Origin: Isurus oxyrinchus
Taxonomy: Eukaryota
DNA length: 64,000 bases
NCBI GenBank assembly: GCA_026770705.1
Contig: JANJGN010000052.1
Location: forward strand, 2,666,001 to 2,730,000
Direction of reading: 5' to 3'
Each line of letters opens with the position of its first letter. Position 1 is the first letter of the stretch. Both the position numbers and the translations under genes were made by a program. Positions 960-40,003 of this stretch are shown here, piece after piece. Below the pieces are notes generated by a model. That model was not told the DNA's origin. It saw only the letters and a program-made list of their open reading frames with translations, and did no database searches.

Positions 960-1435
960 ACAGGATTCCCCCACAAGGGGTAACATCCCCTCAGCATCCA
1001 CCCTGTCAAACCCCCCACCACCTCAGAATCTTATATGTTTCAATAAGATCACCTCTCATTCTTCTAAACTCCAATGGATACAGGGCCCAACCTGCTCAAC
1101 ATTTCCTCATAAGACAAACCCCCTTCATCCCAGGAATCAGCCCAGTGAACCTCCTCTGAGCTGCCTCCAATGCAGAGTCTATCCCTCCCTAAGTAAGGAG
1201 ACCAGAACTGTACACACTGCTCCTGATACAATCTCACCAACGCCCTGTACAGTTGTAGCAAGACTTCCCTCCTTTTATACTCCATCCCTTTGCAATAAAG
1301 GCCAACATTCCACTTGCCTTCCTCATTCCGTGGTGTTCCTGAATGCTGACTTTCTGTGATTCATGTACAAGGACACCCAGATCCCTCTGTGTCGCATTCT
1401 GTAGACTCTCTTCATTGAAGTAATATTCTGCTTTT
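960..1435 (-). mobile_element. CR1 LINE ORF2 3' fragment
   Basis: MEYKRREVLLQLYRALVR...CVQFWSPYL motif typical of the CR1 ORF2 C-terminus. Confidence 0.85.
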
Positions 1436-1468
1436 TGATGTCCTGTCCCCTCCCTTGTTGCCTTTCAG

Positions 1469-1758
1469 GAGTGACGTCAGAGGGATGGTCTATGAAGGCG
1501 CTGCCTCGGAGGGCCATCAGCAGCTCTTGTGTGGTTATTCCGTGTAGCTTTGACTTTCCTTCCCACTCTTACACAGCACTGCACGGAGCTTGGTATAAAT
1601 ATTGGTATAGATGGAAATATACCATCACATACACCAAAGATCCCAATTATGCGATGGCCACATTCGTGGGACGTGCTAAAATAATCGGCGACTTGGAAGG
1701 GAAGAATTGTTCGGTGGGGATTGACAGTCTCAGAGCTGAAGACAGTGACGTGTATTAC
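1469..1758 (+). pseudogene. Siglec/MAG/CD22-type V-set exon truncated at DSDVYY
   Basis: Acceptor tttcag ending 1468; W...SCVVIPCSFDFP...GAWY...GRAKIIGDLEGKNCSVGIDSLRAEDSDVYY, then runs into Gypsy gag with a stop at 1768-1770; no FR motif, G strand or downstream Ig exons found. Confidence 0.85.
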
Positions 1759-2900
1759 ACCCAATTCTAAATCTTTTCACCAATTAGTTGTCCTCATGAA
1801 GATGTGTTTTCAGCCGAAGCCGTGGGTAATAATGCAGAGGTTTAAGTTTAACTCCAGAGTAAGGGCCCAGGGAGAGTCCATCGCAACCTATACAGTGAAG
1901 TGGAAGCAGGTGACTGAGCACTGGGACCTCGGAGACACACTCAATGACATGTTGCGGGGCCGATTGGTTTGTGTCGTTCACCCCAACGCCATTCAGAGCC
2001 GTTTACTCGCAGAAGCCGACATCGATTTGAACCGCGCCATGGAAATAGCGCCAGGCATGGAATGTGCTGGGAGAGACTGGCGGGATCTACAGGAATATGC
2101 AACATGGCGCCAGTCCTCAGCTGGGACAGGAACCAACCACCGGGCGTGAGGCTCAAACTGGAGAGAGAGAGAGAGAGAGGGAGAGAGAGAGAGAGACAGC
2201 CGCCAAGCGAGAGACAGTCTCTGCCGCTCCAGAAACTAAAAGCCTTCGTGGGAGTATTTCAGCAGCAACTCCGAAGTTGGTCTGTTCTTGATGTGGTGGG
2301 GAGTGAGCACGTACCGGACACCTGCAGGTTCAAGGGGGCAGAATGCCATCACTGCCACAAGAAAGGGGTGGGTAATAAAGCAATGCAGGTTGAAATCGAG
2401 ACAGCCGATCAGGCAGTGCACCAACATGATGAAAGTGAATAATATCACAGAGCCTGAAGCTGCTGATACCGATGTCTATTCCCTGTCCAATGTCACAGTG
2501 GTAAAAACTGAACCTATAACCATCACAACCCAAGTGAATGGGCAGCCACTAGTAATGGGGCAGATACGGGAGCCTCAGACACAGTGGTGGAAGAGCCCAC
2601 ATTTAAACAGCTAAATGAAGGAACCCAGACGCTGAATTTAGAGCCAACAATGGATCAGCTGAAGACACACACTGGAGAATCCATACAGGGAAAGGACCTC
2701 ATCCCAGTACCTGTGTCCTACAGGCAGCAGACAGCCCAGCTTCCAGTGATCATAGCGACAGGTGAGGGCCCTAGTCTTCTGGGCCGAGACTGGTTCCAGA
2801 AAACCAAGCTCAGCTGCTCTGAAATGTTTCACTGGAGGAGTTGCTGAGTTGCTGGGGGAATATGAGAGTGTATCTCGGAATGAGTTTGAAGAATTGAAGC
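1759..2900 (+). mobile_element. Decayed Ty3/Gypsy gag-protease fragment
   Basis: KSFHQLV...QRFKFNSRVRAQGESIATY...LNDMLRGRLVC gag; CHHCHKKG zinc-knuckle remnant; DTGAS protease motif near 2563; frameshifted. Confidence 0.85.
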
Positions 2901-7042: not shown

Positions 7043-7256
7043 TTGCGTCAATATGAACACATATTTGCACAAGGTGAAGGGCGTTGCGGAGGGACTGATA
7101 GTTCTCGGCGCCAGACAGTCAATGTCCCAGTGACCTTACTGCTGGTCCCAGGCCAGTGGGACAGGGAACATCGACACTGCAATATCCAGAAATGGGTGTG
7201 ATACCACACAGCTACCCACCCGCGGCTGTCCCCTTCAAGTGTTTCAGGTATAAGAG
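7043..7256 (+). promoter_or_regulatory. HAMP: Putative hepcidin proximal promoter
   Basis: TATAAGAG 7249-7256 (77 bp upstream of the ATG); GGCGCC 7107-7112 overlapping CAGAC (BMP/SMAD-element-like); TTGCACAA 7065-7072 (C/EBP-like); TTGCGTCA 7043-7050 (C/EBP-ATF/CRE-like). Confidence 0.6.
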
Positions 7257-7325
7257 CAGGAAGCTCCTCTAGTTACAAACCAAAGCATCAAAGCAGAGCC
7301 AGAAGATCAGAAGAGACAGGCAGAG

Positions 7326-7418
7326 ATGGGAAGCTCCCAGATGAAATGGCGACTTGTCTTGTTCACTCTGACTTTGCTGCTCTCCCTGCAGCTGAGTCAC
7401 TTCTTCTCCTTGTCGAGG
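7326..7418 (+). CDS. HAMP: Hepcidin exon 1 (signal peptide; alternative in-frame ATG at 7341)
   Basis: Hydrophobic leader downstream of TATA; donor GTAAGC at 7419. Confidence 0.85.
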
Positions 7419-10400
7419 GTAAGCTAAGAGATGTCCCTCTGGGTGAGGTGTTTCTTGCACATGACACTACATCTACCACCCAGATAGACTGGTCACTTCC
7501 GCAGTTTGATATTATTATGTTCGTGCCTTTAATATTGTCGCCCTCTATGAATTTAACATCATTTCCTTCTGTCATTTCCCCTGAAATTCTCATTCTTGTT
7601 TTCAATCCCTCCTCAGCGACTCCCTATCTCTGTAACCTCCTCCAGCCCGTACAACCCTCCCTATCTCTGTAAACTCCTCCAGCCCCTACAACCCTCCCTA
7701 TCTCTGTAACCTCCACCAGACCTTACAACCCTCCCTATCTCTGTAACCTCCTCCAGCCACTACACCCCTCCCTATCTCTGTAACCTCCTCCAGCCGCTAC
7801 AACCCTCCCTATATCTGTAACCTCCTCCAGCCCCTACAACAATCCCCATCTCTGTAACTTCCTCCAGCCCCTACAACTGTCCCTATCTCTGTTACCTCCT
7901 CCAGCCCCTACAACACTCCCTATCTCCGTAACCTCCTCCAGCCCCTACAACCCTCCCTATCTCTGTAACCTCCTCCAGCCCCTATAAACCTCCCTATCTC
8001 TGTAACCTCCCCCAGGCCCCACAACCCTCATGATCACTGTAAACTCCTCTAGACCCTACAACCCTCCCTATCTCTGTAACCTCCTCCAGACCCTACAACC
8101 CACCCTATCTCTGTAACCTCCTCCAGGCCCCACGACCCTCAGAATCACTGTAACCTCCTCCAGCCCCTACAATGCTCATGAACTCTATAACGTCCTCTCC
8201 ACACTATAACTCTCCCTATCTCTGTAACCTACTGTGGCCCCTACAGCAGTATCTATTTTGGTAACCTCCTCCAGCCTCTACAACCCTCCTTACCTCTGTA
8301 ACCTCCTCCAGCCCCCACAACCCCCCCCATCTCTTTAACCTCCTACAGCCCCTACTCACCTCCCTATCTCTGTAACCTCCTACAGCCCCTACAACCTTCC
8401 CTATCTCTGTCACCTCCTACAGCCTCTAGAACCCTCCCTATCTCTGTTACCTCCTACAGCCTCTACAACCCTCCCTATCTCTGTAACCTCCTCCAGCCGG
8501 AACAACCCTACCTAAATCTCTGGTCTGAGTCTCACTCCAGGGAATTCAGTCCCATAACGTCGGTCAACACTCCGTGCTGAGGGAGTGCTGCACTGTCAGA
8601 GGGTCAGTAGTGTGGAAGTGTTGCACTATTGGAGGGACAGTACTGAGTGAGTGCTATACTGTCGGAGGTCAGTACTGAGGGAGTGCTGCTGTGTCGGAGG
8701 GTCAGTACTGAGGGAGCGCTGCACTGACGGAGGGACAATACTGTGGGAGTGCAGCACTATCGAAGGGTTAGTACTGAGGGAGTGCTGCTGTGTCGAAGGG
8801 TTAGTACTGAAATAGAGCTGCACTGACGGAGGGACAGTACTGAGGGAGCGCAGCACTATTGAAGGGTTAATACTAAGGGAGTGCTGCAGTGTCAAAGGGT
8901 TAGTACTGAGGGAGCACAACAATGTTGAATGAGACATTAAACTGAGTCCCCCGTCTGCCCTCTCGGGCGGGTGTGAAAGATCCCACAGCCACTATTTGGA
9001 GGAAGAGCAGGGGGTGTTCTCCCCGGTGTCCTGGCACCAATATTTATCCCTCACCCAACATCACCAAAAACAGATGATCTAGGCCATGATCACATTGCTA
9101 TTTGTGGGATCTTGCTGTGCACAAATCAGCTGCCACATTTCCTACAGTGTGAGTGCACTTCAAAAACATCCTTCAGTGGCTGTGAAATGCTTTGGGATGT
9201 GGTGAAAGGCGTTAGAGAAATGCAAGTCTGTCCTCCTCCCCCTCTCTCTCCTGTACCTCTCTCTCTCTCTCTCCCTCTCCCTCAATCCTCCTCTCACTTT
9301 CTCCCTGATAAATTCTTTCTTTTTGCAGGTTGACACTGCTTTAGGTTCTTCGACGATTGAGAAATCTGTGGATTCCCCGGACACGGTAGGTGGAAATTCA
9401 TTCCTTATTTTAAGGTTTCTCCCTGCTCGTTTCTTCCACAGAAAGTTTACTGATTTCAAGCTGATTTCAGTGGCAGTCTGTCTCGGTTATACTCAGGAGG
9501 CATGTTTGAAATCGAACCCCCCCCGCCCCCTTTTTTTGCAAAGCTGGGAAGAGACAATTCCAAGGAAGTGAACATATCCCCACAGGAATTTTAAATGTAA
9601 CCCACGCCGGGAATAGTGAGAGGGAGACTGATCCAGCCTGGGAGTGGGTTAAAGAGAGGCTGGGAGTCGAGAGTCGGAGAGAGGGATGGAATGGGGGAGG
9701 GAGGGATTGGAAGAGAGAGACAGAGAGTGGGACGGGGAGGGGTGAAAGGGAAAGAACATAGGTGGGAGAGAGTGACAGAGGGAGAAATTAAAGAGATGCA
9801 GAGTGAGGGAAAGTGAAAAGGGAAGAGAGATTGTCCAAGAGAGAGAAATTAACAGGGAAGGGAGAGTTACAGAGTGAGCGAAAGTTACAAAAATAGTGTG
9901 AGAGAGAGGGAGAGATACAGAGTGGGAGAAGGAGACAGGGGAGAGAGAGGGAGAGAGACAGGAAAAGGGAGAGAGGAGAGAAAGATTGGGAGAGAGGGCA
10001 ATTGAGAGGAAGAGTAGGAGAGAGAGAGACAGGGTGAGGAGGAGTGGATGAGAGGAAGAGAGAGAGAGATATGGAGCAGGAGAACACCTCCTCCGGTCCC
10101 GATGTTCCTCCAAAATCTCTGACATTACTGCATCTCCCGGGTCCCCCTGATTCCCATCGCTCCACCATTGGTGGCCGTGCCTTCAGCTGCCTGGGGCCCT
10201 GAGCTCCGGAATACCCTCCCTTAACCTCTCTGCCTCTCTCTCTCTCTCTCTCTCTCCTTTAAGACGCTCCTTAAAAACTGACATCTTTGACCAAGCTTTT
10301 GGTCACCTATCCCTAATATCTCCATATGTGACTCAGTGTTAGACTTCTCTCTGATTTACGCTCCGGTAATGTGGGCTGGGACATTTTGCAATGTCCGAGG

Positions 10401-11902
10401 CGCTGTGTAAATGCAAGTTGTGAGTGTTATGTGGAAGGGAGACCCCAGGTGGCAGTCAGTGCCAGAGACTGGAGTCATTGTGCGCAGACCGTATCTAATC
10501 TCTCCGAATGCACAATCGGTTTGACTGTCAGCCAAAGCACTTTTGATATTTGATCCTTCTAACTGTTTATAACCAGGCCTACATCAAACACCGAGAGGCT
10601 GGTTAATCAACAGACACCTTAGAGGATCGAGTGAAAGACAAAGAGGACTTGCATTTCTCTATAAAAACAAAGAAAACTGCGGATGCTGGAAATCCAAAAC
10701 AAAAACAGAATTACCTGAAAAAACTCAGCAGGTCTGGCAGCATTGGCGGAGAAGAAAAGAGTTGACGTTTCGAGTCCTCAGAAGGGTCATGAGGACTCGA
10801 AACATCAACTCTTGCATTTCTCTAGCGCCTTCCAACACATCAGGACGTCCCAAACTGTTTCGCAGACAATCAAGTGCTTTTTTTCTTTCATGTGAGGTCA
10901 CTGATGTACTGTGGGAAAAGAATCAGCCATTGGCGCACTGTAAGATCCCACAGACAGCAGCATGATAATGACCAGCGCACTCCCAGTACTTGCACTGCAA
11001 GTGTCAGTTCAGGGTGTCTGCTCGATTCTCTGCAACTCTCAGCTCTGAGTTAAAAGGACCACCAGGCGTAATTGAGAAATTACCGAGCTGTCGGAGGGTC
11101 AGTACCAGCGGGGGGGCAGGACAGTCGGAGGGTCAGTACTGAGGGGGTGCTGCATTGTCAGACAGTCAGTCTTGGAGTGCTGCACTGTCAGAGGGTCAGT
11201 ACCGGCGGGGGACTGCACAGTCGGAGGGTCAGTACTGAGGGGGTGCTGCATTGTCAGACGGTCAGTACTGAGGGAGTGCTGCACAGTCGGAGGGTCAGTA
11301 CTGAGGGGATGCTGCACTGTTGAAGGCGCTGTCTTTCAGATGAGATGTTAAACTGAGACAACATCTGCCCTCTCAGATGGATGTAGAGGATTCCATGGCC
11401 ACAATTTAAATGAAGTGCGTCAGGAGTTGGGGGTATGTGTGGAGGGGGTGGTGGGGGCTGGATGGGGTGGAGTTATGTCCGCTTTCCTGGGGCAAACATT
11501 TATCCCTCAACTGACATTGGTAAAAAACTGAAAATCGGGGCCATTATCACATTTCTGTTTGTGGGATCTTGCTGTGCGTGAATTGCCTGCTGCGTTTCCT
11601 ACATTACAGCGGTGAGCTCACTTCAGAAAAAGTCCTTCCTTCAGCTGTGGAACACTTTGGGCCATCCTGAGGAGGGGAAAGGCGCTATAGAAATGCGCCA
11701 TCCTCCTTCCAATGACGCGCCTGATTGAAATGATGCCTTCTTTCTTTCCGGAATGTTCTCACCTATTGTCCTCCTGCTTTTCCAGGGCTCCTTGCTGCAG
11801 CGCCAGAAGAGAATGGGCAGACAGCAGCTCTGCAGATTCTGCTGTAACTGCTGTAATTGGAGAGAACCAAATGAGACTTGTGGTCTCTGCTGTAGATATT
11901 AG
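7326..11902 (+). CDS. HAMP: Hepcidin precursor, 3 exons join(7326..7418,9329..9385,11786..11902), 88 aa
   Basis: MGSSQMKWRLVLFTLTLLLSLQLSHFFSLSR|VDTALGSSTIEKSVDSPDT|GSLLQRQKR-MGRQQLCRFCCNCCNWREPNETCGLCCRY*; both introns GT-AG phase 0; 8-Cys C-x2-CC-x-CC-xn-C-x2-CC pattern; furin site; next to Siglecs as HAMP is next to MAG/CD22 in mammals. Confidence 0.92.
7575..8510 (+). repeat. L2 ORF2 C-terminal fragment expanded into a 32-bp minisatellite (HAMP intron 1)
   Basis: EILILVF...PYLCNLLQP then many copies of ctccctatctctgtaacctcctccagcccctacaac. Confidence 0.85.
8570..9230 (+). mobile_element. DeuSINE (SacSINE1-like) with internally expanded 30-bp minisatellite
   Basis: cagtactgagggagtgctgcactgtcggagggt units followed by the Deu-like domain (aaagatcccac...gaagagcagggg...ctccccggtgtcctgg...atatttatccctca). 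Confidence 0.75.
9329..9385 (+). CDS. HAMP: Hepcidin exon 2 (prodomain, 57 bp)
   Basis: Long pyrimidine tract plus gcag acceptor; donor GTAGGT; phase 0/0, open frame; size typical of HAMP exon 2. Confidence 0.82.
10080..10420 (+). mobile_element. L2 LINE 3' end
   Basis: attggtggccgtgccttcagc...tttaagacgctccttaaa...tttgaccaagcttttggtcacct...ggcgctgtgtaaatgcaagttg. Confidence 0.7.
10662..10810 (-). mobile_element. Short Penelope-type end insertion with 14-bp target-site duplication and inverted repeat
   Basis: cttgcatttctcta repeated at 10648-10661 and 10811-10824; inverted arms 10757-10780 and 10790-10813. Confidence 0.7.
11085..11700 (+). mobile_element. DeuSINE with 30-bp minisatellite (HAMP intron 2)
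   Basis: 30-bp units then gtctttcagatgagatgttaaactgag...catttatccctcaac...gatcttgctgtgc. Confidence 0.7.
11786..11902 (+). CDS. HAMP: Hepcidin exon 3 (RQKR cleavage site + 29-aa mature peptide at 11813-11899)
   Basis: Acceptor cttttccag; 8 cysteines in hepcidin order; TAG at 11900-11902. Confidence 0.95.
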   Translation, partial: GSLLQRQKRMGRQQLCRFCCNCCNWREPNETCGLCCRY

Positions 11903-12199
11903 ACCCTGGCCTCATTCACGCAAGGTCATCCTGCACCATGCCACAGCCTCTCCCCTCCTTATCTACTGCTTAGCAATCTATTTCACACAGGCCCTGTTCA
12001 TTAATTCCAACTGAAACTTTACCTGCGTTTTACAGCAGGGAAAGAAGCCATTCGGCCCATCTGTTCCATGCTGGTGTTTCTGCTCCACACGAGTCTCCGC
12101 CCACCCCTTCTCCATCTCACCCCATCACCATATCCTTCTATTCATTTCTCCCTCGTGTGTTTATCCAGCTTCCCCTTAAATACATCGACACTATTCACC

Positions 12200-12787: not shown

Positions 12788-12793
12788 AATAAA
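12788..12793 (+). terminator. Candidate HAMP polyadenylation signal
   Basis: First AATAAA seen after the HAMP stop, followed by T/GT-rich sequence. Confidence 0.45.
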
Positions 12794-16385: not shown

Positions 16386-17884
16386 CAGAGCTAGATAGAT
16401 TCTTGATTAACAATGGGGTGAAAGGTCATTGGGGGTAGGCAGGAATGTGAGGTTGAGGTGACAATCAGATCAGCCATGATCTTACTGAATGGCGGAGCAG
16501 GTTCGAGGGGCTGAGTGACCTACTCCTGATCCTAACTCAGATATCCATATGTTCTCAAAGGCAAATGGGGATGGGCAACAAATACTGGCCTAGTCAGCGA
16601 CACCAACATCCCTGAAATGAATAAGAAAAAAATGTATCAATCAATTAAATTTATTGATTAATCGAATTGAAATTCCTCCAGCTGCCGTGGTGGGATTTGA
16701 ACCCGTGCCTTCAAAGCATTCACCTGGGCCTCTGGATCACTGGCCTAGTGCCATTCCCATGGTGCGACTGTCTGCTATCATCATGGCTCTTTCACATCGA
16801 TGTGGAAGTCCTGATAACAGAAGCATTGGACGAGGTACAGAAAGGTGACAAATCAGGAGCTCCATTGCTCAATATGAACGGATAATAAAGATAAATGAAC
16901 ATAAACCTTCCAGTCGCTAATTAGGGAGTCACTGTGGAACCCATGAGTCCCTCGCAGCGCTATTGCAACCTTCTGGATCCCCAGTAGGGGACTCGGGGTG
17001 CAGCTGTGTCTTCCTCATCATTTGGAAAAGCCGGAATTGTTCGGGTGCCCCTTCAAACAGGCCGAAGATGCAGTGGGTGATGTCTCCCACAGGCCCTGGG
17101 AGACCTCCCCTGCCAATTTGTTTTGTAGCTTATTCTTCAACTGCGACATTGGATCAGCTTGAAAAAGGGTGGGGCTGAGGCAATGCCACCAGGTAAGCGT
17201 CTATTCCCTCACACGTCACCCCCCCCCCACCCCCGTAACCATCACAGTCCCTCCCATCGTGCTGGAGGAGCATAATGTGCACATTCCCCTCCTTCCAATC
17301 AGTCTCCTCCCTTCCTCTCTAATCCTTGATCTTATTGTGTTCGGGGTTGACATCCCAGTCCTCCTCCCTAGACTGTCTGATGTTGACATCCCAATGCCCC
17401 ATGTAGACCTGACCTCTCTCCAACTAGAGGTCCATTGTACTGTGACTTACAGAGACCACCGGCCCCCCTCGATTCCCACCCCACCCCTACTCTCTATATT
17501 ACCTGCTCCCCACTGACAGGCTGCAGATGCCTCCCCTGACTGGGATTGTGCCACCTGCGGCCTAGTATCAAGCCACCCACCCCCAGGACCGACGTGTGTG
17601 AGGGACTGACCACGTCCTGCACACCATGCTGGGCACCACCAACCCAGGACTGCCAGGCTCTCCCCACCACACTGGACTGGGACTAGAATAGGCGTGCCAA
17701 GCACAGCTCTCTAAATCGTGGCGCAGACCCACAGCACTCGCAATGTTTTGTGGCCCGAATCCTTGCTGAGGAACTGCCCAGCACTAAAATCAAAACAACT
17801 GCAGATGCTGGAAATCCAAAACAGAAACAGAAACAGAAATACCTGGAAAAACTCAGCAGGTCTGGCAGCATCGGCAGAGAAGAA

Positions 17885-18730
17885 CTGAGGTAGTGCGGCA
17901 CTGTCGGAGGTTATGAACTGAGGGAGAGCTGCACTGTCGGAGGGTCTGAGCTGAGGGAGTGCTGCACGGTCGGAGGGTCTGAGCTGAGGGAGTGCTGCAT
18001 GGTCGGAGGGTCTGAACTGAGGGAATGCTGCACTTTCGGAGGGTTTGAACTGAGGGAGTGCTGCACTGTCGGAGGCTCTGAAATGAGGGAGTGCTGCACT
18101 GTTGGAGGGTTTGAACTGAGGAAGTGCTGCACTGTCGGATGGTTTGAACTGAGGAAGTGCTGCACTGTCGGATGGTTTGAACTGAGGAAGTGCTGCACTG
18201 TCGGATGGTTTGAACTGAGGGATTGCTGCACTGTCGGAGGGTCTGAACTGAAGGAGTGCTGCACTGTCGGAGGGTTTGAACTGAGGGAGTGCTGCACTGT
18301 CGGAGGGTTTGAACTGAGGGAGTGCTGCACTATCGGAGGGTATGAACTGAGGGAGAGCTGCACTGTCGGAGGGTTTGAACTGAGGAAGTGCTGCACTGTC
18401 GGAGGGTCTGAACTGAAGGAGTGCTGCGCTGTCGGAGGGTCTGAACTGAGGGAGTGCTGCACTGTTGGAGGGTCTGAAATGAGGGAGTGCTGCACTGTCA
18501 GAGGGTCTGAACTGAGAAAGTGCTGCACTGTCAGAGGGTCTGAACTGAGAGAGTGCTGCACTGTCGGAGGTTCTGAACTGAGGGAGTGCTGCACTGTCGG
18601 AGGGTTTGAACTGAGGGAGTGCTGCACAGTCGGAGGGTCTGAACTGAGGGAGTGCTGCTCTGTCGGAGGGTTTGAACTGAGGGAGTGCTGCATTGTCGGA
18701 GGGTCTGATCTGAGGGAGTGCTGCACTGTC
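17885..18730. repeat. 30-bp minisatellite variant (gtcggagggtctgaactgagggagtgctgcact)
   Basis: About 28 tandem units; source of spurious long ORFs. Confidence 0.95.
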
Positions 18731-19461
18731 TAAAGAACATTGTACAAATTGCACAAAATTTAATCTGATGCCTGTGTCTCATGCTAACATGAAGTTCATG
18801 CACACAACAGGAATATTTCTCTCTGTTTCTCTGCAGCAAGACAGCTTTGGTATCACACCACCCACTGGCAAGAGTGTGCAGCTACAATGTGACATGTTTA
18901 CATTGGAAATTTCTATTATAAAGATGGACAGAGGAATTCATCTGATTGGAATACGTGACAACAGGAAGCTATGTCTTTGAGCCAAGAATTTTGCAGCAAA
19001 ACAAGAATTTTAATCTTTAAATATCTACAGAACAGGCTGAGCATTTTAATCACTTGAGTTAATCAATGTAATTTTATTCATAAGCCAAATGCTTCTTACA
19101 ATCTATCGCAGCATGAAAAAGGTGCAGCATTCAGAAAGCACATTCCAATCAGAGAACAGAGTTTAGCAACGGCACATTTCTGTTCATTCCTACTCGATGA
19201 ACAATTTCAAAAGGAAATTGGACGGAAATTGGAAATAAATTTGCAGGGATACGGGGATAGAGCGGGGGATGGGACTGATTGCATTGCTTTACAGAGAGAC
19301 AGCATAGACTCAATGGGCCAAATGTCCTCCTCCATTGCTGGAATGACTCGATGATACGGAGATGATTCTAACCAGGACACTGACCAGTTTCTTTACAACT
19401 TAACACAACATCACACGTTATTTGTCCGCACTGACTGACCAGATTGTTGCTGTACAAAGCT

Positions 19462-19601: not shown

Positions 19602-22600
19602 CTAGAGAACACACAGAAAGAAATCATCACTGACTCTCCGCTTTCAATCTCTCACTCTGGCTGAACAATCAAGCTTCATATCACTGCAACATTTGCTGTA
19701 ATATTGACCCATCCACTGGGATTCAATGTGGAATGAATGTTTTCATTGTAAACACTCTAAGAGTGGACAATCGGTACTTTCCCCTTAGCGTGGAACATTG
19801 GTGAGAATGGATCATTGTGCTGTTGGACTCCCTGTCCAATGTTTCTCTCCATCGCTGTGTACAGGATTGTGCTGTAGAAAATTCTGGAAACGTTTAGTGC
19901 AGGGTGGAAATCCATCTCGGACGTGTGTGCGAATTGGGCAGGATCGAGATGGACTCCCCCACGGACATACACCCCCCGCTTAATAAACAGTTCCAATCTT
20001 TACCCAGAGAGAGGGGAGAATGTGGAACTCGCTCCCACAGGGAGTGGTCGAGGTGAATAGTAGCAAATTAGGAAGTGAAATTGCTTGAAAAGCTTGGAGA
20101 TGCAAGGGTTAAGTGTTACCGTGCTACCACTGGTGGGAGAGTGTAACTACAGTGTGACGTTTACATAGGCAATCCCCATTATGAACATGGACATCATGTG
20201 AAAAATGGGCACTGGAAAGCTGAGAACTTGATGTAAGCTTTTCACCAACAGGAATTCCCTTCCTAAACCTCTCCACTTCCCTCTTATTCTCAGATACTCA
20301 AACAAAATTTCACACAAAATCACGTAAGGAGGAATTGGGACTGGTGACTGGTCAAAGAGTTAGATTTCAGGAAGGTTCTTAAAGTAGGATAGAGGGTTGG
20401 AGAGGCAGAGAGTATCTGTGAGTATCTCTGTGCATCTGAGTGTCTGTAATAGACTTTGCAATTTCCATATTCTTCCATAAATATGAAAGGGAACACAAAT
20501 CCCAGAATCCAGGTCAACTCTCCGGTGCAGCACTGAGGGAGGTCAGGTAATCCACAGGGGAGTATGTGCTAGTGTGTTTGTGAGTGTGTCTTTGTGTGTG
20601 CTCATAGATGTGGGATTGTTTGTCTGCAGGTGTCTATTTAAGGCTGTATATTTATGTGTGTTTTTGTAGTGTTTCAATCTGAGAGAGATGTTGAAGTTTG
20701 TCTTAACTAACGTTCCACAGTGATGGTTATGAACCCCTCCACTGCTCCATGTTCATTCTCTGAGCACACTGATAGTCTCCAGTGTCCCTGGATGTAACTG
20801 TGAGGAATCACCAACCACAGCTCATTGTTGGAACTTGTTCTGTTCATTGTGATATTCAGATGTCAGGACCGGACTCAACAAGACAGATTGCAGGTTTACC
20901 AACAGAAAGTGAACAACAATTTATATTTAAAGGGAAGAAAGTGCAGGTTAATCAGCAAGTGGTCTCTGATTGGAGGAGGTGTTGCCATGGAAAATAATGT
21001 GTGTGAGATGTAAAGTTTAGACAGCTTGTCCCTTCATTCAGCAATAATCAAATAAAGATCAGTTAACTTCTATCGACTGTGAAGCACTTTGAGAGGCCTT
21101 AGAATGTGGACACTGAGAACGGGCTGCACTGTCAGAGGGTCAGCGCTGAGGGAGTGCTGATGTAGAATGAAGGGTGTCTGTACTTACCTTGCACAGTTAG
21201 TACGAGGGTCCGCTCCGATGAAACAGATGGATATCTCACTCTGCAGCTGAGAGTGTGTCCGTGGTGTTTGAGTGATGGGGTCAGGGTCAGAACAGAAGTA
21301 TAGGTCAGAGTGACACCATGCTGAGTTACAGTGTTTGAGACTGATCCAGGTACGTCAGTGGGAGTGTCCCAGGTTAAGACAGGTGCTGCTGTTCCATTGC
21401 ACGTTGTGTTGAAGGTGCAGCTTACATCCACAGGCTTTCCTGCAATAATTTCAGCAGGGAATATCGTGGGTTTATCTGTGAAATCTAACAGACAGAGAAT
21501 GGATCCTTTTAGAGAAATATAACGTGAAGCATCAGTTCAAATAGAAATCACAGTCCCACAAGAGAAAGCACTTTTACAAGGATGATATCAGAACTGAGAG
21601 GTTACAATGATCAGGAGAGAATTTCCTGCTTTGAGACTTTGGTGTTTCTGTCTCTCAGCTTAATACACGTTCACTCCGAGACACTTGAACTGATAATAGT
21701 GGGTGAGGGTGAAGGAGCAGACCAGAGTTTGGAGTGCACTACCCCATCATTCACTCAGCGATCTGGGCCATTTATTACTTTGCAATTTGTGGGAGCTTGC
21801 TGTGCGCAAATTGGCTGTTGTGTTTCTCACATTACAACAGTAACTACAATTCAGGAATCAGCTCATTGACTGTGAAGTGATTTGGCCCGTGCTGAGATGG
21901 TGAAAGGTGCTACAGAAATGTGAATCTTTCTTCTGTCGCTATGTCAGACTTCGAGTCAGGATTAGAGAGATCGATGGGAGTGGATAACCTGATAACATTG
22001 ATGGACACAGTCAATACATTTAATCATTGATATTAAAGTGAGTATTAGAGGTTGCTTTAGGAGTGAACTGGAAGCTATCACCAGGTTATTGAGAATCAGA
22101 CAGTGTGTTATAATAAGCTGTGTTTTGTGTTAATATGTAAACGTCACAGTTTGTGTTATTTCCCATTGAGTGTTGGATGTGAATTGTTGAGTAATTATAA
22201 CACAGCACTTACCAGAAACGTGAAGCTGGGTTACAGGGTAATAGTTATGGCTCGGACCATTGTCAAATTCTATTCTGAAAAAATAAGGTCCTGCATCTTC
22301 CCGTGTGATGTTGTTTATAATCAGGGAACAGTCGCCATCTTTCAGGTCTCCAGACAGCCGGGTCCGATGGTGGTACCGTGGTAACTCGTGACTGTGATTC
22401 TTGGAGTGAAAGGCTACAGACGATGTTCCCCGTTTCTCGTTATTAAACCAGACTCCACCTCGCAGTTGGTTTTCCAGACACGATGGATAACTGTAGTGAC
22501 ATGGAATCTGTACACACGAACCTTCCTGCGCTGTCACCTCTCGTGGAGTGTCACCTTTCCACTCTTGTGAGGGTTCAGCTGGGGAGAGAAATCTCAATAT

Positions 22601-25600: not shown

Positions 25601-28600
25601 AAACTAACACTGTTCAGATGATGCTGCAAAGCCATTGCAAGTGATTCTCTGGCTACGATGAGATGGATAAGAATGGAGCCAGGGGAGAGCAGTCCCACCC
25701 AGCTGGACGACAGTGGAGAGGTGTTGGAGGAGGATGGTGTGGTCGATCGTGTCAAAGGCTGCAGACAGATCGAGAAGGACGAGGAGGGAAAGTTGACCTT
25801 TGTCACAGTCACACAGGATGCCATTTGTGACCTTGATAAGAGCTGTTTCAGCACAGTGGCTGGGGTGGGAACCTGATTGGAGGGATTCAAACATGGAGTT
25901 CCGGGAAAGATGGGAACGGATTCGGGAGATGGAAACAGGTTGCAGGACTTTGTAGGGGAACGAGAGGCTGGAGATGGGACGGGGGTTTACACGGACAGTG
26001 TGAGGGGTGGAAGGTGTAGTGGGGAGGAGACACTTCACTCAGGGGGGAGGTGTCATCACCCCTCAGCTTGGTTTACGTTACAGCTATGATGTGGATTCAA
26101 TCACACACAATAAGCTCATGGATCTGGGAGTAGAAATAGACAAATCATTAAAAATAGTGACGCTGGTTAACACGGCCAAAAAACAAGCAAATCAAACACT
26201 ATTATTTCCCGTTGAGTGTTGGATGTGAATTGTTGAGTAATTATAACACAGCACTTACCAGAAACGTGAAGCAGGGTGTCAGGATAGTTGCTGTAACTAT
26301 TGTTGCCGTCAAATTCTATTCTGAAATAATAATAACCTGCATCTCCCCATGTGATGTTGTTTATAATCAGGGAACAGTCGCCATCTTTCAGGTCTCCAGA
26401 CAGCCGGGTCCGATGGTGGAACCGTGTTAACTCGCGATTGTGATTCTTGGAGTGAAAGGCTATGATCCCTCTAGACCTTGTATTCCATGTATTCCATGTG
26501 TACCATTTCACATACCAGATTCCGACACGTGCTCTCCCGACTAAACGTGCTGGATAACTGTAATTACATGGAATCTGTACACACGAACCTTCCTGCGCTG
26601 TCACCTCTCGTGGAGTGTCACCTTTCCACTCTTGTGACAATCCAACTGGGGAGAGAAATATCAATATTTAACTCTGTGTGTTTTGACGATCCACTAGACT
26701 CGATATCCACCCCCTCCTTCACTGGGGCACAGTGGCTGCAGTGTGGACCATCTACAGGACACACATGGAACTCCCCAAGGTTTCACAATGGATGGGAGAG
26801 AATCCTGGAAACAGGAGTGGACAAGTTCATTCTACATTGGCTGATGGTCCTCAGGACCCTGTTTGTGCACAAGCCTGCTATCCAACAGAACTGAAGTTGG
26901 GGAAAATCCATTTGGAATTCCATTGTCCGGGGCATTGTGTTAACTTGCTGGGTTTGTTTTAAATCTAAAATCTATTTTTGGTCTGTTGCCTTAAAGGGAG
27001 TGTAACTGGGAGTCAGGTTAATTAGGAATTTTAGGAGTTATTATAGCTGTCATTGTAGTCTTATGTATGTGCTTGAAATCTTTTATTTTTGTGACAAATA
27101 TTTTAATTTATTTTTTTAAATCTCTAAAGATCTTGGTGGACTTATTGCTTCTGAATTCAGTGCACACATCTCATAATAAATACAAATTGCAAATTCATTA
27201 TGATCGTGTGACCACCTTTCTCTCATGGACTTGGTCTGCCTGGGTCACATCACCTGCCAAGTGATAACACTGTTGTAAAATGCCTTTCAGGGACAGCAGC
27301 ATGACATCACTCGAGGGGAAGTGTGTCATGTGATTTTTCAGAACTGGGGTTGGCTTAAGGAAGTTCTCTGTGTATTTGTGTGCGTTAGACATAAGGTCTA
27401 TCTTTCAGTTCAAGTTTAGTTTGTATTTCTGTATTTGGGTGTTTTGAAAAGGGGGAACTTGAGTTTTGGTTTCACTTTGGAAGAAGCCGCCTATCTAATG
27501 AGTTTTTATAACTCTTGAAGGGAAGTCAAAACAAACACGAGTTAGAAGAAACTGTGCTGTTGCCTAGCAACAGTGATCCAGGGAGAAAGACCCACAGAGA
27601 CAGAGAAAAACAGAAAAGTACTTTCAGTTCTGTTGAAAGGAGTTTCCAGGAGAAGCAGCAAAGGAGCGGGACAGATAGTCAGTCCCAAAGTAAAGAAGAA
27701 GCCAAAACTATCGAGTGGAACAGGAGAACGGGCCCAAGAAAACCTTCTAGTCAAATCTGAAAAAGGCCCTGTTAAGTGAAGTTAAGAGTGAGGAGCAGAA
27801 GAAGGCTCCAAACATAAAGGGAGAAAGCAGCAGGACACAGACCTAAAGCAAAATAGGCTTGCGAGAAGCCAGAAGATCCTAGGAGACACCACAGGTTGGT
27901 GACTCATTACTACGGCCATGTGAAGCCATGGTGTTCCATTGACACGGCTGAGCATTGGAGAGACAGGGCGTGGAAGGAAGGCTGAATGCACGTGGCGATC
28001 CAGGGGGCAGGAACATGGGAAGGAGAGTTTGAAATAGTGAAAGTGGACCCTTGTGGAAGGTGTATGAGTGAAAGTGTCATGTTGGAGAAGATTCCAAAGC
28101 GAGTTCTTGGAGAGTGGAGATTGGAAACCCTCATATGGATATCTCAGTTCATTGAGACAGGTTGGCGGACAGTGTAACAAGCGTCTGGGGTCAGATGAGG
28201 AGGGAGACATAGCATTTGTTTCAAGTGGGCTCTGTCACTTAGTTTAAGATTCTGGTGTCCCTGACCACAGGTCGTCTATTGGTTTACATCGACTGTGTAC
28301 TTAGTGTGAACATGATAGTATAAGATAGTTATTGTAACTTGTGTTATTTTTGTGAATCTGTATATATCTGCAAAGATATAGGTCTGGGTGAAGGAGTAAT
28401 GTAATATAGTTTGTCTTTCCTAGTTTAATAAATGTTTTATTCTTTTGTTAGAAGTTCATCAGATGATTCCTGAGACTCTGTTCAGTAGCTGCACTCCACA
28501 TTCCTAAATAAAAAATAAAAGTTAGGACCTATCAAGCTGAGTTCCACCCTGGGATCTGACTTGCCCAGTAGTAACATCAGCTGGGATGATAACACCATCC

Positions 28601-32575: not shown

Positions 32576-32794
32576 ACCAGTGAGAAGATCGAGGATGTTT
32601 TGTGCTCTCAGCAAAACGTTTACCATGTGATGATCTGTCAGCTCATATTTGGGCAGCTGTAGTCATGAAGCTTCTCCATTGGCTCCGTGGGATTAGACTC
32701 CTGCCCCTCACCTCGGAGGCTGAAACTCAGGCGATAAGAGTTCCCAATACAGGTCTCTGGCCTTATGATACATTTCAACGATCCCTGTTATCAT

Positions 32795-34705
32795 TACGGA
32801 GGGAGTGCTGCACTGTCAGCGGCACTGTACTGTGGGAGTGCTGCACTATCAGAGGGTCAGTAATGTGGGAGGGCTGCAATGTCAGAGGGTCAGTAATGTG
32901 GGAGTGCTGCAACATCAGAGGGTCAGTAATGAGGGAGTGCTGCACTATCAGAGGGTAAGTAATGTGGGAGTGCTGAACTGTCGGTGGGTTTGTACTGAGT
33001 GAGTTCCGCACAGTTGGAGTGTCAGTATTGAGGGGGCGCCGGACTGTGGGAGGGTTAGTACTGAGGTAGAGTGGAGTGTGAGGAGATATCCTTTCATGGC
33101 AAAGTTTAACTGGAATTTATTTAAACACAATTCTTGTACTGTGCGTTATTGCAAAAGAAAGGATTTGAGGAACTAAGTCTTGTTCCCGTAAGCCTAAAAA
33201 TAATTTTCACGGATTTCAATGATTTAGCATTGAAACCTGCCTCTTTGGGCACCAGTCTTGATTGAAACAACTCGCACAGCACAGTGGGAGGGTGAGTACT
33301 GAGGGAGTGCTGCACTGTGGGAAGGTGAGTACTGAGGGAGTGCTGCACTGTGGGAGGGTGAGTACTGAGGGAGTGCTGCACTGTGGGAGGGTGAGTCCTG
33401 AGGAAGTGCTGCACTGTGGGAGGGTGAGTACTGAGCGCGGGCTGCACTGTGGGAGTGTGAGTACTGAGGGAGTGCTGCACTGTGGGAGAGTGAGTACTGA
33501 GGGAGTGCTGCACTGTCAGAGGATCAGTAATGAGGGAGTGCTGCACTGTCAGAGGGTCAGTAATGTGGGAGGGCTGCACTGTCAGAGGGTCAGTAATGTG
33601 GGAGGTCTGCACTGTCAGGTGGTCAGTAATGAGGGAGTGCTGCACTATCAGAGGGTCAGTGATGTGGGAGGGCTGCACTGTCAGAGGGTCAGTAATGTGG
33701 GAGGGCTGCACTGTCAGAGGGTCAGTAATGTGGGAGGTCTGCACTGTCAGATGGTCAGTAATGAGGGAGTGCTGCACTGTCAGAGGGTCAGTAATGTGGG
33801 AGGGCTGCACTGTCAGAGGGTCAGTAATGTGGGAGTGCTGAACTGTCGGTGGGTCTGTACTGAGGGAGTTCCGCACAGTTGGAGGGTCAGTATTCAGGGG
33901 GTGCTGGACTGTGGGAGGGTTAGTACTGAGGTAGAGCGGAGCGTGAGGAGATATCCTTTCATGGCAAAGTTTAACTGGAATTTATTTAAACAGAATTCTT
34001 GTACTGTGTGTTATTGCAAAAGAAAGGATTTGAGGAACTAAGTCTTGTTCCCGTAAGCCTAAAAATAATTTTCACGGATGTCAATGATTTAGCATTGAAA
34101 CCTCCCTCTTTGGGCATCAGTCTTGATTGAAACAACTCGCACAGCACTGTGGGAGGGGGAGTACTGAGGGTGGGCTGCACTGTGGGAGGGGGAGTACTGA
34201 GGGAGGGCTGCACTGTGGGAGGGTGAGAATTGAGGGAGTGCTGCACTGTGGGAGCGTCAGTACTGAGGGAGTGCTGAACTGTCGGAAGGTCAGTAGTGAG
34301 GGAGGGATACAGTGTCAGAGGGTCAGTACTGAGGGAATTCTGCACTGTCAGTTTGTCAGCACTGTGGGAGTGCTGCACAGTCAGAAGGTGTGTACCGAGG
34401 GAATGCCGAACTGTCGGAAGGTCAGTAGTGAGGGAGGGATACAGTATCAGAGGATCAGTACTGAGGGAATGCTGCACTGTGGGTGAGTGAGTACTGTGGA
34501 AGTGCTGCACTGTCAGATTGTCAGCCATTAGGGAGTGCTGCACTCTCAGAAGGTCAGTGCTGATGGGGTGCTGCACTTGAAAAGGGTCAATAATGAGGTA
34601 GTGCAGCACTATCAGAGGGACAGTAATGAGGGAGCGCTGCACTGACGGAGGGTCAGCACTGAGGAAAAGCTGCACTGTCAGTTCTGAGCGTGGTCTGCAC
34701 TGTCC
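32795..34705. repeat. 30-bp minisatellite arrays with an ~865-bp local tandem duplication
   Basis: Unique block gatatcctttcatggc...aacaactcgcacagcac present at ~33085-33282 and ~33950-34147. Confidence 0.85.
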
Positions 34706-38147: not shown

Positions 38148-39458
38148 CTAACAGACAGAGAATGGATCCTTTTAGAGAAATATAACGTGAAGCATCAGTT
38201 CAAATAGAAAGCACAGTCCCACAAGAGAAAGCAATTTTACAAGGATGATATCAGAACTGAGAGGTTACAATGATCATTAAAGAATTGTCTATTTTTACAC
38301 TTGTTGAATCTCTGTCACTCAGATTAATACACTCTCACTCAGTGACCCTTGATTTGACCAGACTGGGTGAGGGTGGAGGAACAGCTCACAGCTCGGGGAG
38401 AACAGACTCAGCATTTGGAAAAGGATATAGAGACACTGGAGAGGGTGGTAAAAAGCTTCACAAGGATGATCTCAGCAATGTGAGGCTTTACCTATCAGGA
38501 GAGGATGTACAGGCTGGGTCTCTGTTCTCTTGAACAGAGAAGGTTGAGGGGTGACCTCATTTGATCTTTGAAGTAATGAAAGGTTTTGATCGAGTAGACA
38601 TGGAGAGAGTGTTTCCACTCCTCACTTTGAACAAAACCAGAGGCTGACAATATAAGATTGTCACTAATAAATCCAATGGGGAATTCAGGAGAAACTTCTT
38701 TAACCAGAGAGTGGGGAGAATGTGTACTTCAAGAATCACTTCATTGGCTGTGAATTGATTTAGGATGGTCCTGAGGTGGTGAAAGGCGCTATAGAAATGC
38801 GAGACTTGGTTTTGTATTTTGAAAGCAGGTTTCCAAGGATGAGATGGGAACTGAGAAGTAACAACAATCAGCAGCAACTTTCCTATTTTCAAACTTGGTG
38901 GGGAATGTGTCACTGAGCTGAATACACTTTCACTCCCAGACCCTTGAATTGCCAACACTGGGGTGTGGGTGATGGAGCAGCCCACAGCTCATGGAACCCT
39001 GGCTCATCATTCTCTCAGAGATCTGGGTCACTGATCCCATTGCTCTCTGTGGGAGCTTCCTGTGTACAAACTCACTGCCACGTTAGTGACTATACTTCAA
39101 GAATTTCTTCATTGTCTGTGAAGTGATTTGAAGTTTGTTGAGGTGGTGAAAGGCGCTATAGGAATGCACGTCCTTCTTTTGTCAAATTGTTAGACTTTTA
39201 AACAGGATTAGAGAGACTGATGGGAGTGGATAGCCTGATAGCATTGATGGACACAGTCAATACATTTAATCATTGACATTAAAGTGATTATTAGAGGTTG
39301 CTTTAAGACTGAACTGGAAGCAATCACCAGGTTATTGAGAATCAGACAGTGTGTAAAAATAAACTGTGTTTTGTGTTAATATGTAAACGTCACAGTTTGT
39401 GTTATTTCCCATTGAGTGTTGAATGTGAATTGTTGAGTAATTATAACACAGCACTTAC

Positions 39459-39823
39459 CAGAAACATGAAGCTGGGTTACAGGATAGTAGTTGTATCTTT
39501 TCCTGCCGTCAAATTCTATCCTGAAAAAATAAGGTCCTGCATCTTCCCGTCTGATGTTGTTTATAATCAGGGAACAGTCGCCATCTTTCAGGTCTCCAGA
39601 CAGCCGGGTCCGATGGTGGAACCGTGGTAACTCGTGACTGTGATCCTTGGAGTGAAAGGCAATGGGAGAACCCAATTTGTGTGTTTCTTTATTACACCAG
39701 ATTCCATCTCGTGGTTTGTTTTCCAACTCTACTGGATAACTGTAACGAAATGGAATCTGTACACAGATTCCTGCGCTGTCACCTCTCGTGGAGTGTCACC
39801 TTTCCACTCTTGTGACAGTCCAG
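39459..39823 (-). pseudogene. Frameshifted Siglec V exon
   Basis: 365 bp versus 369; net 4-bp loss at ~39766 giving an early TAG; B-strand Cys codon changed to TTT. Confidence 0.88.
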
Positions 39824-40003
39824 CTGGGGAGAGAAATCTCAATATTTATCCCTGGATCCTCATTGTTTAATGAATCTCTTTGGATCTTCTTTGTCTAAGG
39901 AATCTTTTTGGATCCTCATTGTCTAAGGGATTATTTCTGATCCAAACCCCATATTGTTGTATTGTTGATTCCGATGCAGCATTGTAGACTGACTTGTCCC
40001 CCA

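What the first reader, a model, noticed from the sequence alone, without database searches (positions are those of the whole stretch)
7326..11902. Hidden intact three-exon hepcidin gene in a cartilaginous-fish-type locus
Seen: three small exons with phase-0 GT-AG introns join to an 88-aa prepropeptide with a signal peptide, an acidic/Ser-rich prodomain, RQKR and 8 Cys. It is absent from the ORF track because the exons are tiny and the introns are full of repeats. Established: this is the HAMP architecture (three exons, furin site, four disulfides). Inference: a functional shark hepcidin that gene predictors could easily miss. I cannot check whether it is already annotated.
Basis: partly seen in the sequence, partly recalled or inferred. 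Interest (0 to 1): 0.85.

Follow-up and report, generated by a model that had tools for sequence, protein, structure and literature searches.

The report
Expressed divergent shark hepcidin gene copy
This is a real, intact, spliced and transcribed three-exon hepcidin-family gene in a shark genome, but it is one diverged copy of a multi-copy family and lacks the N-terminal motif of the iron hormone, so it is an interesting paralogue and not a newly discovered kind of gene.

Summary
Exons 7326-7418, 9329-9385 and 11786-11902 (+) have consensus GT-AG phase-0 introns and encode 31+19+38 aa. Exon 3 alone passes the Pfam Hepcidin gathering cut-off (31.6 vs 27 bits). Contigs of an RNA-like public run carry both predicted junctions, 7418/9329 and 9385/11786; a DNA run does not.

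The exon split matches annotated shark hepcidins: basking shark LOC144671611, and catshark "hepcidin-2-like". So shark hepcidins are already public. No public protein of 31-100 aa shares three 5-residue words with this exon-3 product.

Against the basking-shark protein, the prepro part is 52/59 identical but the mature peptide only 12/29 (4/21 outside the cysteines). The canonical shark peptide is 26/29 conserved between shark orders. This copy has replaced the SHLS-type N-terminus, which in sea bass marks the ferroportin-regulating Hamp1. Its loop gained two acidic residues and an N-E-T sequon. The 8-residue loop itself is normal for sharks.

Best reading: a secreted, convertase-processed, four-disulfide paralogue that is probably not the iron hormone. 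Function was not tested.

The scan had already noted about 20 similar genes on other DNA of this genome. The three exons were never joined for any search.

The parts
7249..7255 (+). TATA-like box (TATAAGA), 71-77 nt upstream of the ATG; a likely core promoter
   Evidence: Read from the sequence. Transcript contig depth in run X1 rises from 7.3e3 in bin 7100-7269 to 2.9e5 in bin 7270-7439. This is an inference; the transcription start was not mapped.
7326..7418 (+). Exon 1 coding part: 31 aa carrying the signal peptide (n-region with K/R, hydrophobic core at residues 10-20)
   Evidence: It is 29/31 identical to basking-shark LOC144671611. tblastn gives E 2.4e-14.
7419..9328 (+). Intron 1 (GT..AG, phase 0, 1910 nt), mostly tandem repeats
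   Evidence: The joint 7418/9329 is seen in 10 contigs of X1 and in none of DNA run X10.
9329..9385 (+). Exon 2: 19 aa, an acidic and Ser/Thr-rich propeptide segment
   Evidence: It is 16/19 identical to P0003.
9386..11785 (+). Intron 2 (GT..AG, phase 0, 2400 nt)
   Evidence: The joint 9385/11786 is seen in 8 contigs of X1. One further contig carries C>T at 9384 (also one contig in X5). None is seen in DNA run X10.
10577..10731 (+). Minor cassette exon inside intron 2 (155 nt). It has an in-frame stop after 9 codons, so this isoform would lack the hepcidin domain
   Evidence: Joints 9385/10577 and 10731/11786, one contig each in X1.
11786..11902 (+). Exon 3 coding part: end of the propeptide, the convertase site, the mature peptide and the TAG stop
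   Evidence: Pfam Hepcidin PF06446 scores 31.6 bits against a cut-off of 27. tblastn gives E 3.6e-12.
11801..11812 (+). RQKR proprotein-convertase (furin-type) site
   Evidence: It aligns with REKR and RQRR of the annotated shark hepcidins.
11813..11899 (+). Predicted 29-aa mature peptide: 8 Cys, 8-residue loop with an N-E-T sequon at residue 20, net charge +2, no His
11903..12180 (+). 3' UTR, minimum extent; the end was not mapped. AATACA lies at 12179 and the first AATAAA at 12788
   Evidence: Run X1 holds 34 of 34 sampled 31-mers of 11786-12180. Contig depth is 6.7e5-8.7e5.

Best explanation
This is one transcribed copy of an expanded hepcidin gene family in a shark, with the closest public protein from the basking shark. 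The gene has three exons.

The inferred pathway runs as follows. The 88-aa product enters the secretory pathway through an N-terminal signal peptide. A furin-type convertase cuts after RQKR. This releases a 29-residue peptide whose eight cysteines form the four-disulfide hepcidin hairpin.

The copy keeps the signal and pro regions of the canonical shark hepcidin almost unchanged. It has replaced most non-cysteine residues of the mature peptide. In particular, it lacks the SHLS-type N-terminus that is conserved from teleost Hamp1 to the canonical shark form. I therefore read it as a non-hormonal, type-2-like paralogue with a defence or other secreted-peptide role. A separate canonical copy, also expressed in this species, would serve as the ferroportin-directed iron hormone.

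Shown: gene structure, family membership, splicing, transcription, and the pattern of divergence.
Inferred: secretion, the cleavage site, disulfide pairing, and the non-hormonal role.
For: - Family: exon 3 alone passes the Pfam Hepcidin cut-off. Its Cys pattern and G before the last CC align with annotated shark hepcidins and with PDB 1S6W bass hepcidin.
- Structure: the 31/19/38 aa split is identical to Cetorhinus P0003 and Scyliorhinus P0004.
- Splicing and transcription: both junctions occur in run X1 and are absent from DNA run X10. In X1 the exon bins have depth 1.6e5-8.7e5, against 3e2-1e3 in non-repeat intron bins. X1 holds all 34 sampled 31-mers of exon 3 plus UTR, including the copy-specific mature region.
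- Divergence pattern: against P0003 the prepro part is 52/59 identical and the mature part 12/29 (non-Cys 4/21). P0003 against P0004, which are from different shark orders, is prepro 38/59 and mature 26/29.
- A second paralogue: one X1 contig follows this exon 3 up to 11815 and then reads, by eye, S-H-L-S-I-C-M-Y-C-C. This is a canonical-type paralogue expressed in the same run (loose ends).
- N-terminal motif: sea bass Hamp1 (QSHLSLC...) regulates ferroportin, whereas Hamp2 (whose core CRFCCNCC is identical to this copy's) does not (PMC5665920). Second hepcidins of fish are regarded as not iron-regulatory (PMC8235187).
- Synteny: V-set plus Ig_CD22 and C2-set exons flank the gene, as MAG and CD22 flank human HAMP (the human arrangement is from my own knowledge).
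Against: - Net charge is only +2, with two acidic residues and a possible N-glycan. This is weakly cationic for an antimicrobial peptide.
- No activity, secretion or processing was tested.
- Transcript contigs cannot be assigned to this copy as against near-identical sibling copies. X1 intron contigs differ from the window at about 1-2% of positions. The commonest exon 2/3 junction contig carries T, not C, at 9384.
- Contig depth is a poor measure of expression, as the tool itself warns.
- The AlphaFold model was uninformative (pLDDT 55.9).
- Aromatic residue 9 (Phe) and the six-residue spacing before the first Cys are retained, so some ferroportin affinity is not excluded.
Confidence: 0.65

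Rival explanations
1. It is the species' iron-regulatory hepcidin (a true HAMP orthologue) and acts on ferroportin despite its unusual N-terminus.
For: It has the hepcidin fold signature, a convertase site, very abundant transcript contigs, and a conserved position next to Siglec/CD22-like genes. Six residues precede the first Cys and residue 9 is aromatic, as in human and teleost hormones. Ferroportin with the hepcidin-binding Cys exists in cartilaginous fish (PMC8235187).
Against: The SHLS-type N-terminus, which is conserved in catshark, basking shark and teleost Hamp1, is replaced (PMC5665920). A canonical-type transcript is present in the same run. The mature peptide is 12/29 identical to a form that is otherwise 26/29 conserved between shark orders.
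Confidence: 0.12
2. It is a young, redundant duplicate with no selected function of its own. On this view it is transcribed only because it inherited a strong promoter, and its mature region is drifting under relaxed constraint.
For: The genome holds many similar copies, and at least one is reported with a damaged splice site (scan notes; not checked here). The prepro region is nearly identical to the canonical gene, which suggests recent duplication or gene conversion. A minor mis-spliced isoform exists.
Against: After losing 17 of 21 non-Cys identities, the copy still keeps all eight Cys, the Gly before the last CC, the convertase site, the reading frame, the stop position and both splice sites. 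By the scan's notes the same derived form recurs in several copies, which points to retention.
Confidence: 0.18
3. It is a chance arrangement of short ORFs and not a gene.
For: None beyond the small size of the exons.
Against: Pfam score above the cut-off. Three collinear exon matches to annotated proteins. Spliced contigs at exactly the predicted junctions.
Confidence: 0.01

Closest known systems
Cetorhinus maximus (basking shark) LOC144671611 isoform X2, NCBI 'uncharacterized protein', 88 aa, Pfam Hepcidin (P0003)
   Same: Same length and the same 31/19/38 aa exon split. Signal and pro region are 52/59 identical. It shares the convertase site, eight Cys and an 8-residue loop. It also has alternative isoforms that replace exon 3 (P0002, P0006), comparable to the minor cassette isoform seen here.
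   Different: The mature peptide is only 12/29 identical. The basking-shark form starts M-S-H-L-S-V-C and has a Lys-rich loop, with net charge +5 and one His. The window copy starts M-G-R-Q-Q-L-C and has an acidic loop with an N-E-T sequon, with net charge +2 and no His.
Scyliorhinus canicula 'hepcidin-2-like' proteins (P0004 of 88 aa, P0005 of 84 aa)
   Same: Three-part prepropeptide, convertase site and eight Cys. P0004 has the same 8-residue loop. P0005 shows that catsharks also keep a second, diverged paralogue.
   Different: P0004 carries the conserved canonical mature peptide (26/29 identical to basking shark). The window copy is 12/29 identical to it. P0005 has a 4-residue loop.
Teleost Hamp2-type hepcidin (sea bass Hamp2; hybrid striped bass hepcidin, PDB 1S6W)
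   Same: It lacks the Q-S-H-L-S-L N-terminus of Hamp1. Its core C-R-F-C-C-N-C-C and its ending C-G-x-C-C-R-aromatic are identical or near-identical (PMC5665920). It is a diverged paralogue that sits beside a conserved hormone-type copy.
   Different: The duplication is probably independent, because the window copy's prepro region groups with shark hepcidins. The loop is 8 residues, not 5, and has a glycosylation sequon. Antimicrobial activity and lack of ferroportin regulation are shown for sea bass Hamp2 (PMC5665920) but not tested here.
Human HAMP / hepcidin-25
   Same: A three-exon gene and a prepropeptide of similar size (84 aa). A polybasic convertase site lies directly before a peptide with eight Cys. 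Six residues precede the first Cys and residue 9 is aromatic. Siglec genes are neighbours (MAG and CD22 in human; from my own knowledge).
   Different: There is no D-T-H-F-P-I-type N-terminus with His3. The loop is 8 residues, not 4. The mature peptide is 29 residues, not 25. It is multi-copy, not single-copy.

Membership tests
Hepcidin family (Pfam PF06446) | Sequence match to the family HMM above the curated gathering score | tested here: met
   Exon 3 product alone scores 31.6 bits against a cut-off of 27, E 2e-7, covering profile positions 24-52 of 53.
Hepcidin family (Pfam PF06446) | Eight cysteines in the order C-x2-CC-x-CC-loop-C-x2-CC | tested here: met
   All eight Cys columns are invariant in the alignment with three annotated shark hepcidins.
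Hepcidin family (Pfam PF06446) | Prepropeptide with an N-terminal signal peptide and an RX(K/R)R convertase site directly before the mature peptide | tested here: met
   RQKR at 11801-11812 aligns with REKR and RQRR. The hydrophobic core at residues 10-20 has mean hydropathy 2.51 after a K/R n-region. No dedicated signal-peptide predictor was available, and cleavage itself is not shown.
Hepcidin family (Pfam PF06446) | Three-exon gene with exon 3 encoding the mature peptide | tested here: met
   Spliced contigs occur at 7418/9329 and 9385/11786. The exon products align end to end with annotated 88-aa shark proteins.
Hepcidin family (Pfam PF06446) | Beta-hairpin fold held by four disulfides | tested here: inconclusive
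   The AlphaFold2 model of the exon-3 product had mean pLDDT 55.9 and was helical, so it is uninformative. No fold search was run on it.
Hormone-type hepcidin (mammalian hepcidin-25 / teleost Hamp1 / canonical shark form) | Conserved N-terminal motif x-[ST]-H-[LF]-[SP]-[ILV]-C with His at position 3 | tested here: not met
   The window copy has M-G-R-Q-Q-L-C. The shark canonical forms have M-S-H-L-S-[IV]-C and sea bass Hamp1 has Q-S-H-L-S-L-C (PMC5665920).
Hormone-type hepcidin (mammalian hepcidin-25 / teleost Hamp1 / canonical shark form) | Strong conservation of the mature peptide between species | tested here: not met
   It is 12/29 identical to both P0003 and P0004, which are 26/29 identical to each other.
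Hormone-type hepcidin (mammalian hepcidin-25 / teleost Hamp1 / canonical shark form) | Binds ferroportin and causes its occlusion or internalisation; expression responds to iron | not testable with these tools
   This needs peptide synthesis with cell or animal assays.
Teleost Hamp2-type (defence-type) hepcidin | Orthology to teleost hamp2 genes | tested here: inconclusive
   The core motif is identical to bass Hamp2 (PMC5665920). The prepro region, however, is 88% identical to a shark canonical gene, which favours an independent shark duplication. No tree was built, because the peptides are too short and too few.
Teleost Hamp2-type (defence-type) hepcidin | Antimicrobial activity, induction by infection, and no effect on ferroportin | not testable with these tools
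   This needs assays. The net charge of +2 is low for a typical cationic antimicrobial peptide.

The most novel reading that the evidence does not exclude
Sharks may have evolved their own type-2 hepcidin lineage independently of teleosts. On this reading a paralogue kept the hepcidin scaffold, promoter and prepro region, perhaps through gene conversion. It was rebuilt in the mature peptide, with a new N-terminus and an acidic, possibly N-glycosylated loop. It was then amplified to many copies together with neighbouring Siglec/CD22-like receptor genes, and it is now among the most abundant transcripts of the expressing tissue. Its target would be something other than ferroportin.
Probability: 0.35. 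Interest if true: 0.55.

Novelty: new member of a known kind. Interest (0 to 1): 0.36.

Why it matters
[quoted passage not shown] Cartilaginous fish are therefore the key outgroup for asking what the first hepcidin did.

This locus, set beside the annotated catshark and basking-shark proteins, shows three things:
- Sharks have a strongly conserved SHLS-type hepcidin with an 8-residue loop.
- At least this lineage also carries diverged, abundantly transcribed paralogues. This parallels the Hamp1/Hamp2 split of teleosts.
- Such genes can be absent from public protein sets.

The practical value is a correct annotation and a candidate peptide for iron and defence assays. It does not reveal a new kind of system.

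Tried and rejected
- Full-library HMMER search with the 38-aa exon-3 product. The only hit, P0001 (577 aa, 6 stretches), is a translated satellite-like repeat without the hepcidin Cys pattern, so it is spurious. A 38-aa query cannot reach significance in 1.8 billion proteins, so this blank means nothing.
- Word-indexed search with the open frame around exon 3, window:11729-11899, region 18-57. There was no candidate. This shows only that no public protein of 31-100 aa shares three 5-mers with it.
- AlphaFold2 on the exon-3 product with a 4-row alignment. Mean pLDDT was 55.9 and the model was helical. I rejected it as uninformative and ran no fold search.
- ESM Atlas look-up. The best score was 0.76, to an unrelated plant cluster. 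Uninformative.
- PDB sequence search. It returned only 1S6W, at E 0.26. This is useful as an alignment but not as proof.
- The look-up of encoding contigs for the basking-shark and catshark genes. No DNA-level comparison, dN/dS or synteny check in other sharks was therefore possible.
- Window-wide direct-repeat search. It was swamped by the 33-nt satellite and gave no information on segmental duplication.
- Promoter motif scan. It found one GGCGCC at -219 and no TTCnnnGAA. This is too little to interpret.
- Joining the three exons into one protein for searches.
- Complex prediction with ferroportin. I did not run it, because I do not claim binding.

Full report
**Observation**

- Exon 1 is 7326-7418, 31 aa. 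It starts at an ATG with G at -3 and +4 and ends at the donor AGG|GTAAGC.
- Exon 2 is 9329-9385, 19 aa. It follows a pyrimidine tract and CAG, and ends at ACG|GTAGGT.
- Exon 3 is 11786-11902, 38 aa plus TAG. It follows CTTTTCCAG.

The peptide features also hold.
- Exon 1 has a K/R-bearing n-region and a hydrophobic core at residues 10-20 (mean hydropathy 2.51).
- Exon 2 has 4 acidic, 1 basic and 7 Ser/Thr residues of 19.
- Exon 3 carries RQKR (11801-11812), followed by 29 residues with eight Cys.

The introns hold long tandem repeats. The open frames around exons 1 and 3 are only 57 codons long, which explains their absence from an ORF track.

**Is it more than chance?**

Yes, on three counts.
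- Exon 3 alone scores 31.6 bits on Pfam Hepcidin, against a gathering cut-off of 27 (E 2e-7).
- tblastn of an annotated shark hepcidin against the whole window finds these three exons, in order, at E 2e-14, 3e-8 and 4e-12. Nothing else scores better than E 0.5.
- The Cys motif occurs once in all six frames.

**Transcription and splicing**

A public run of organism A (X1) holds all 34 sampled 31-mers of exon 3 plus 3' UTR. Laying its contigs on 7100-12190 gave these results:
- GT..AG joints at 7418/9329, in 10 contigs.
- GT..AG joints at 9385/11786, in 8 contigs, plus one contig with C>T at 9384.
- No such joints in the DNA run X10 of the sister organism B.
- One such junction contig in an RNA-like run of organism B (X5).

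In X1 the exon bins have summed contig depth 1.6e5-8.7e5, against 3e2-1e3 for non-repeat intron bins. X1 therefore behaves as RNA, and the gene, or near-identical siblings, is abundantly transcribed. The tool warns that contig depth is a poor measure of level.

A minor isoform includes a 155-nt cassette (10577-10731). It has a stop after nine codons.

Two caveats apply. X1 intron contigs differ from the window at about 1-2% of positions. The commonest exon 2/3 junction contig has T at 9384 (Thr50 to Met, the residue found in catshark). Part of the signal therefore comes from sibling copies or another allele.

**What it is**

A search with the open frame around exon 1 found basking-shark LOC144671611, named 'uncharacterized protein' by NCBI, with Pfam Hepcidin precomputed. 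That protein in turn found two catshark 'hepcidin-2-like' proteins. All have the same 31/19/38 aa split. Shark hepcidin genes are therefore already public. A nurse-shark hepcidin has also been detected in plasma, and that paper noted no orthologue in the whale-shark protein set (PMC9207270).

No public protein of 31-100 aa shares three 5-mers with this copy's exon-3 product.

The flanks carry V-set plus Ig_CD22 and C2-set exons. This fits the HAMP-MAG-CD22 neighbourhood of mammals (the mammalian arrangement is from my own knowledge).

**The informative pattern**

| Comparison | Prepro identity | Mature peptide identity |
|---|---|---|
| Window copy vs basking shark (P0003) | 52/59 | 12/29 (4/21 outside the Cys) |
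| Basking shark (P0003) vs catshark (P0004), different shark orders | 38/59 | 26/29 |

The canonical shark peptide begins M-S-H-L-S-[IV]-C, has a Lys-rich 8-residue loop and net charge +5. It is under strong constraint, and its start resembles sea bass Hamp1 (Q-S-H-L-S-L-C, PMC5665920).

The 8-residue loop is therefore normal for sharks. It is not a peculiarity of this copy, as some earlier scan notes assumed.

What is derived here is the N-terminus (M-G-R-Q-Q-L-C, no His) and the loop, which has two Glu and an N-E-T sequon, giving net charge +2.

One X1 contig follows this exon 3 up to 11815 and then reads, by eye, S-H-L-S-I-C-M-Y-C-C (loose ends). A canonical-type paralogue with the same propeptide end is therefore expressed in the same sample. 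Identity switches abruptly to about 40% nucleotide difference exactly at the start of the mature peptide. This points either to diversifying selection on the mature part or to gene conversion that homogenises the prepro part.

**Mechanism**

The following steps are inferred. The product is secreted through the signal peptide. A furin-type convertase cleaves after RQKR. A 29-residue, four-disulfide hairpin peptide results.

In sea bass, Hamp1 regulates ferroportin and Hamp2 does not (PMC5665920). Second hepcidins of fish are held not to be iron regulators (PMC8235187). This copy lacks the Hamp1-type N-terminus and even shares the C-R-F-C-C-N-C-C core of bass Hamp2. I therefore read it as a non-hormonal, type-2-like paralogue.

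Evidence against a classical antimicrobial role is the low net charge and the possible glycan. The structure prediction was uninformative.

**Context from the scan**

Earlier notes list about 20 similar three-exon hepcidin genes on this and other pieces of the same genome. Several carry the same derived peptide, and at least three lie on this piece within about 2 Mb. I could check this only indirectly, through the many variant junction contigs and the paralogue contig.

**Verdict**

The reading as a hepcidin-family gene is correct. The reading as 'the' functional hepcidin is not supported.

It is a new member of a known family, of moderate interest as evidence for a shark-side parallel to the teleost Hamp1/Hamp2 split.

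Noticed in passing
window 22133-22600(-), 26170-26667(-), 39379-39795(-), 45483-45953(-), 56416-56886(-), 21135-21536(-), 1405-1767(+): There is an array of Siglec/CD22-like exons. Two V-set exons pass both V-set and Ig_CD22 (PF24518) cut-offs, and one C2-set_2 exon passes its cut-off. Three further minus-strand V-set-like ORFs have near-identical sequence and were not scanned. A weaker V-set ORF lies upstream of the hepcidin gene on the + strand (21.2 bits, below the cut-off).
   Followed up: partly
not in the window; seen as a loose end at window 11815 in run X1: A transcript contig shares exon 3 up to the Met after RQKR. It then encodes S-H-L-S-I-C-M-Y-C-C (read by eye from 30 letters), which is a canonical His3-type hepcidin paralogue of the same species. 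The earlier scan notes I looked at did not mention a canonical copy in this genome.
   Followed up: partly
window 9384: There is a C>T difference (Thr50 to Met, at a CpG) in the most abundant exon 2/3 junction contig of X1 and in X5 of organism B. Catshark proteins have Met at this position. It may mark sibling copies or an allele.
   Followed up: no
window 10577-10731 (+): A cassette exon inside intron 2, in a repeat-rich stretch, is used in a minor isoform and has an in-frame stop after nine codons. The basking-shark gene also has annotated isoforms that swap exon 3 for unrelated sequence (P0002, P0006).
   Followed up: partly
window 8577-8914, 11088-11320, 17780-18860, about 32660-33080, and further arrays near 43-44 kb, 54-55 kb and 61-62 kb: A 33-nt satellite (more than 200 register copies in the window) creates long spurious ORFs rich in Cys, Ser and Val, for example 17714-18778(-) and 60672-62120(-). 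A similar translated repeat protein (P0001) was the only, spurious, hit of the full-library search.
   Followed up: partly
window 39870-41449(-) and 51325-52820(-): There are two near-identical sets of reverse-transcriptase-like ORFs (motif Y-L-D-[LF]-Q-K-[SA]-F). They lie about 11.4 kb apart, each next to a V-set exon, which suggests a tandem segmental duplication of a Siglec-exon-plus-retroelement unit. This was not checked with Pfam.
   Followed up: no
window 7107-7112 and 7249-7255: A single GGCGCC (BMP-responsive-element-like) lies at -219 and a TATA-like TATAAGA at -77. No TTCnnnGAA (STAT-type) motif occurs in the 426 nt upstream of the ATG.
   Followed up: no
window 7100-12190, DNA run X10 of organism B: Non-repeat bins of the gene have summed contig word depth of about 600-2900 in a whole-genome DNA run. 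This would fit many collapsed copies in the sister species as well. No single-copy control was laid, so this is only a hint.
   Followed up: no
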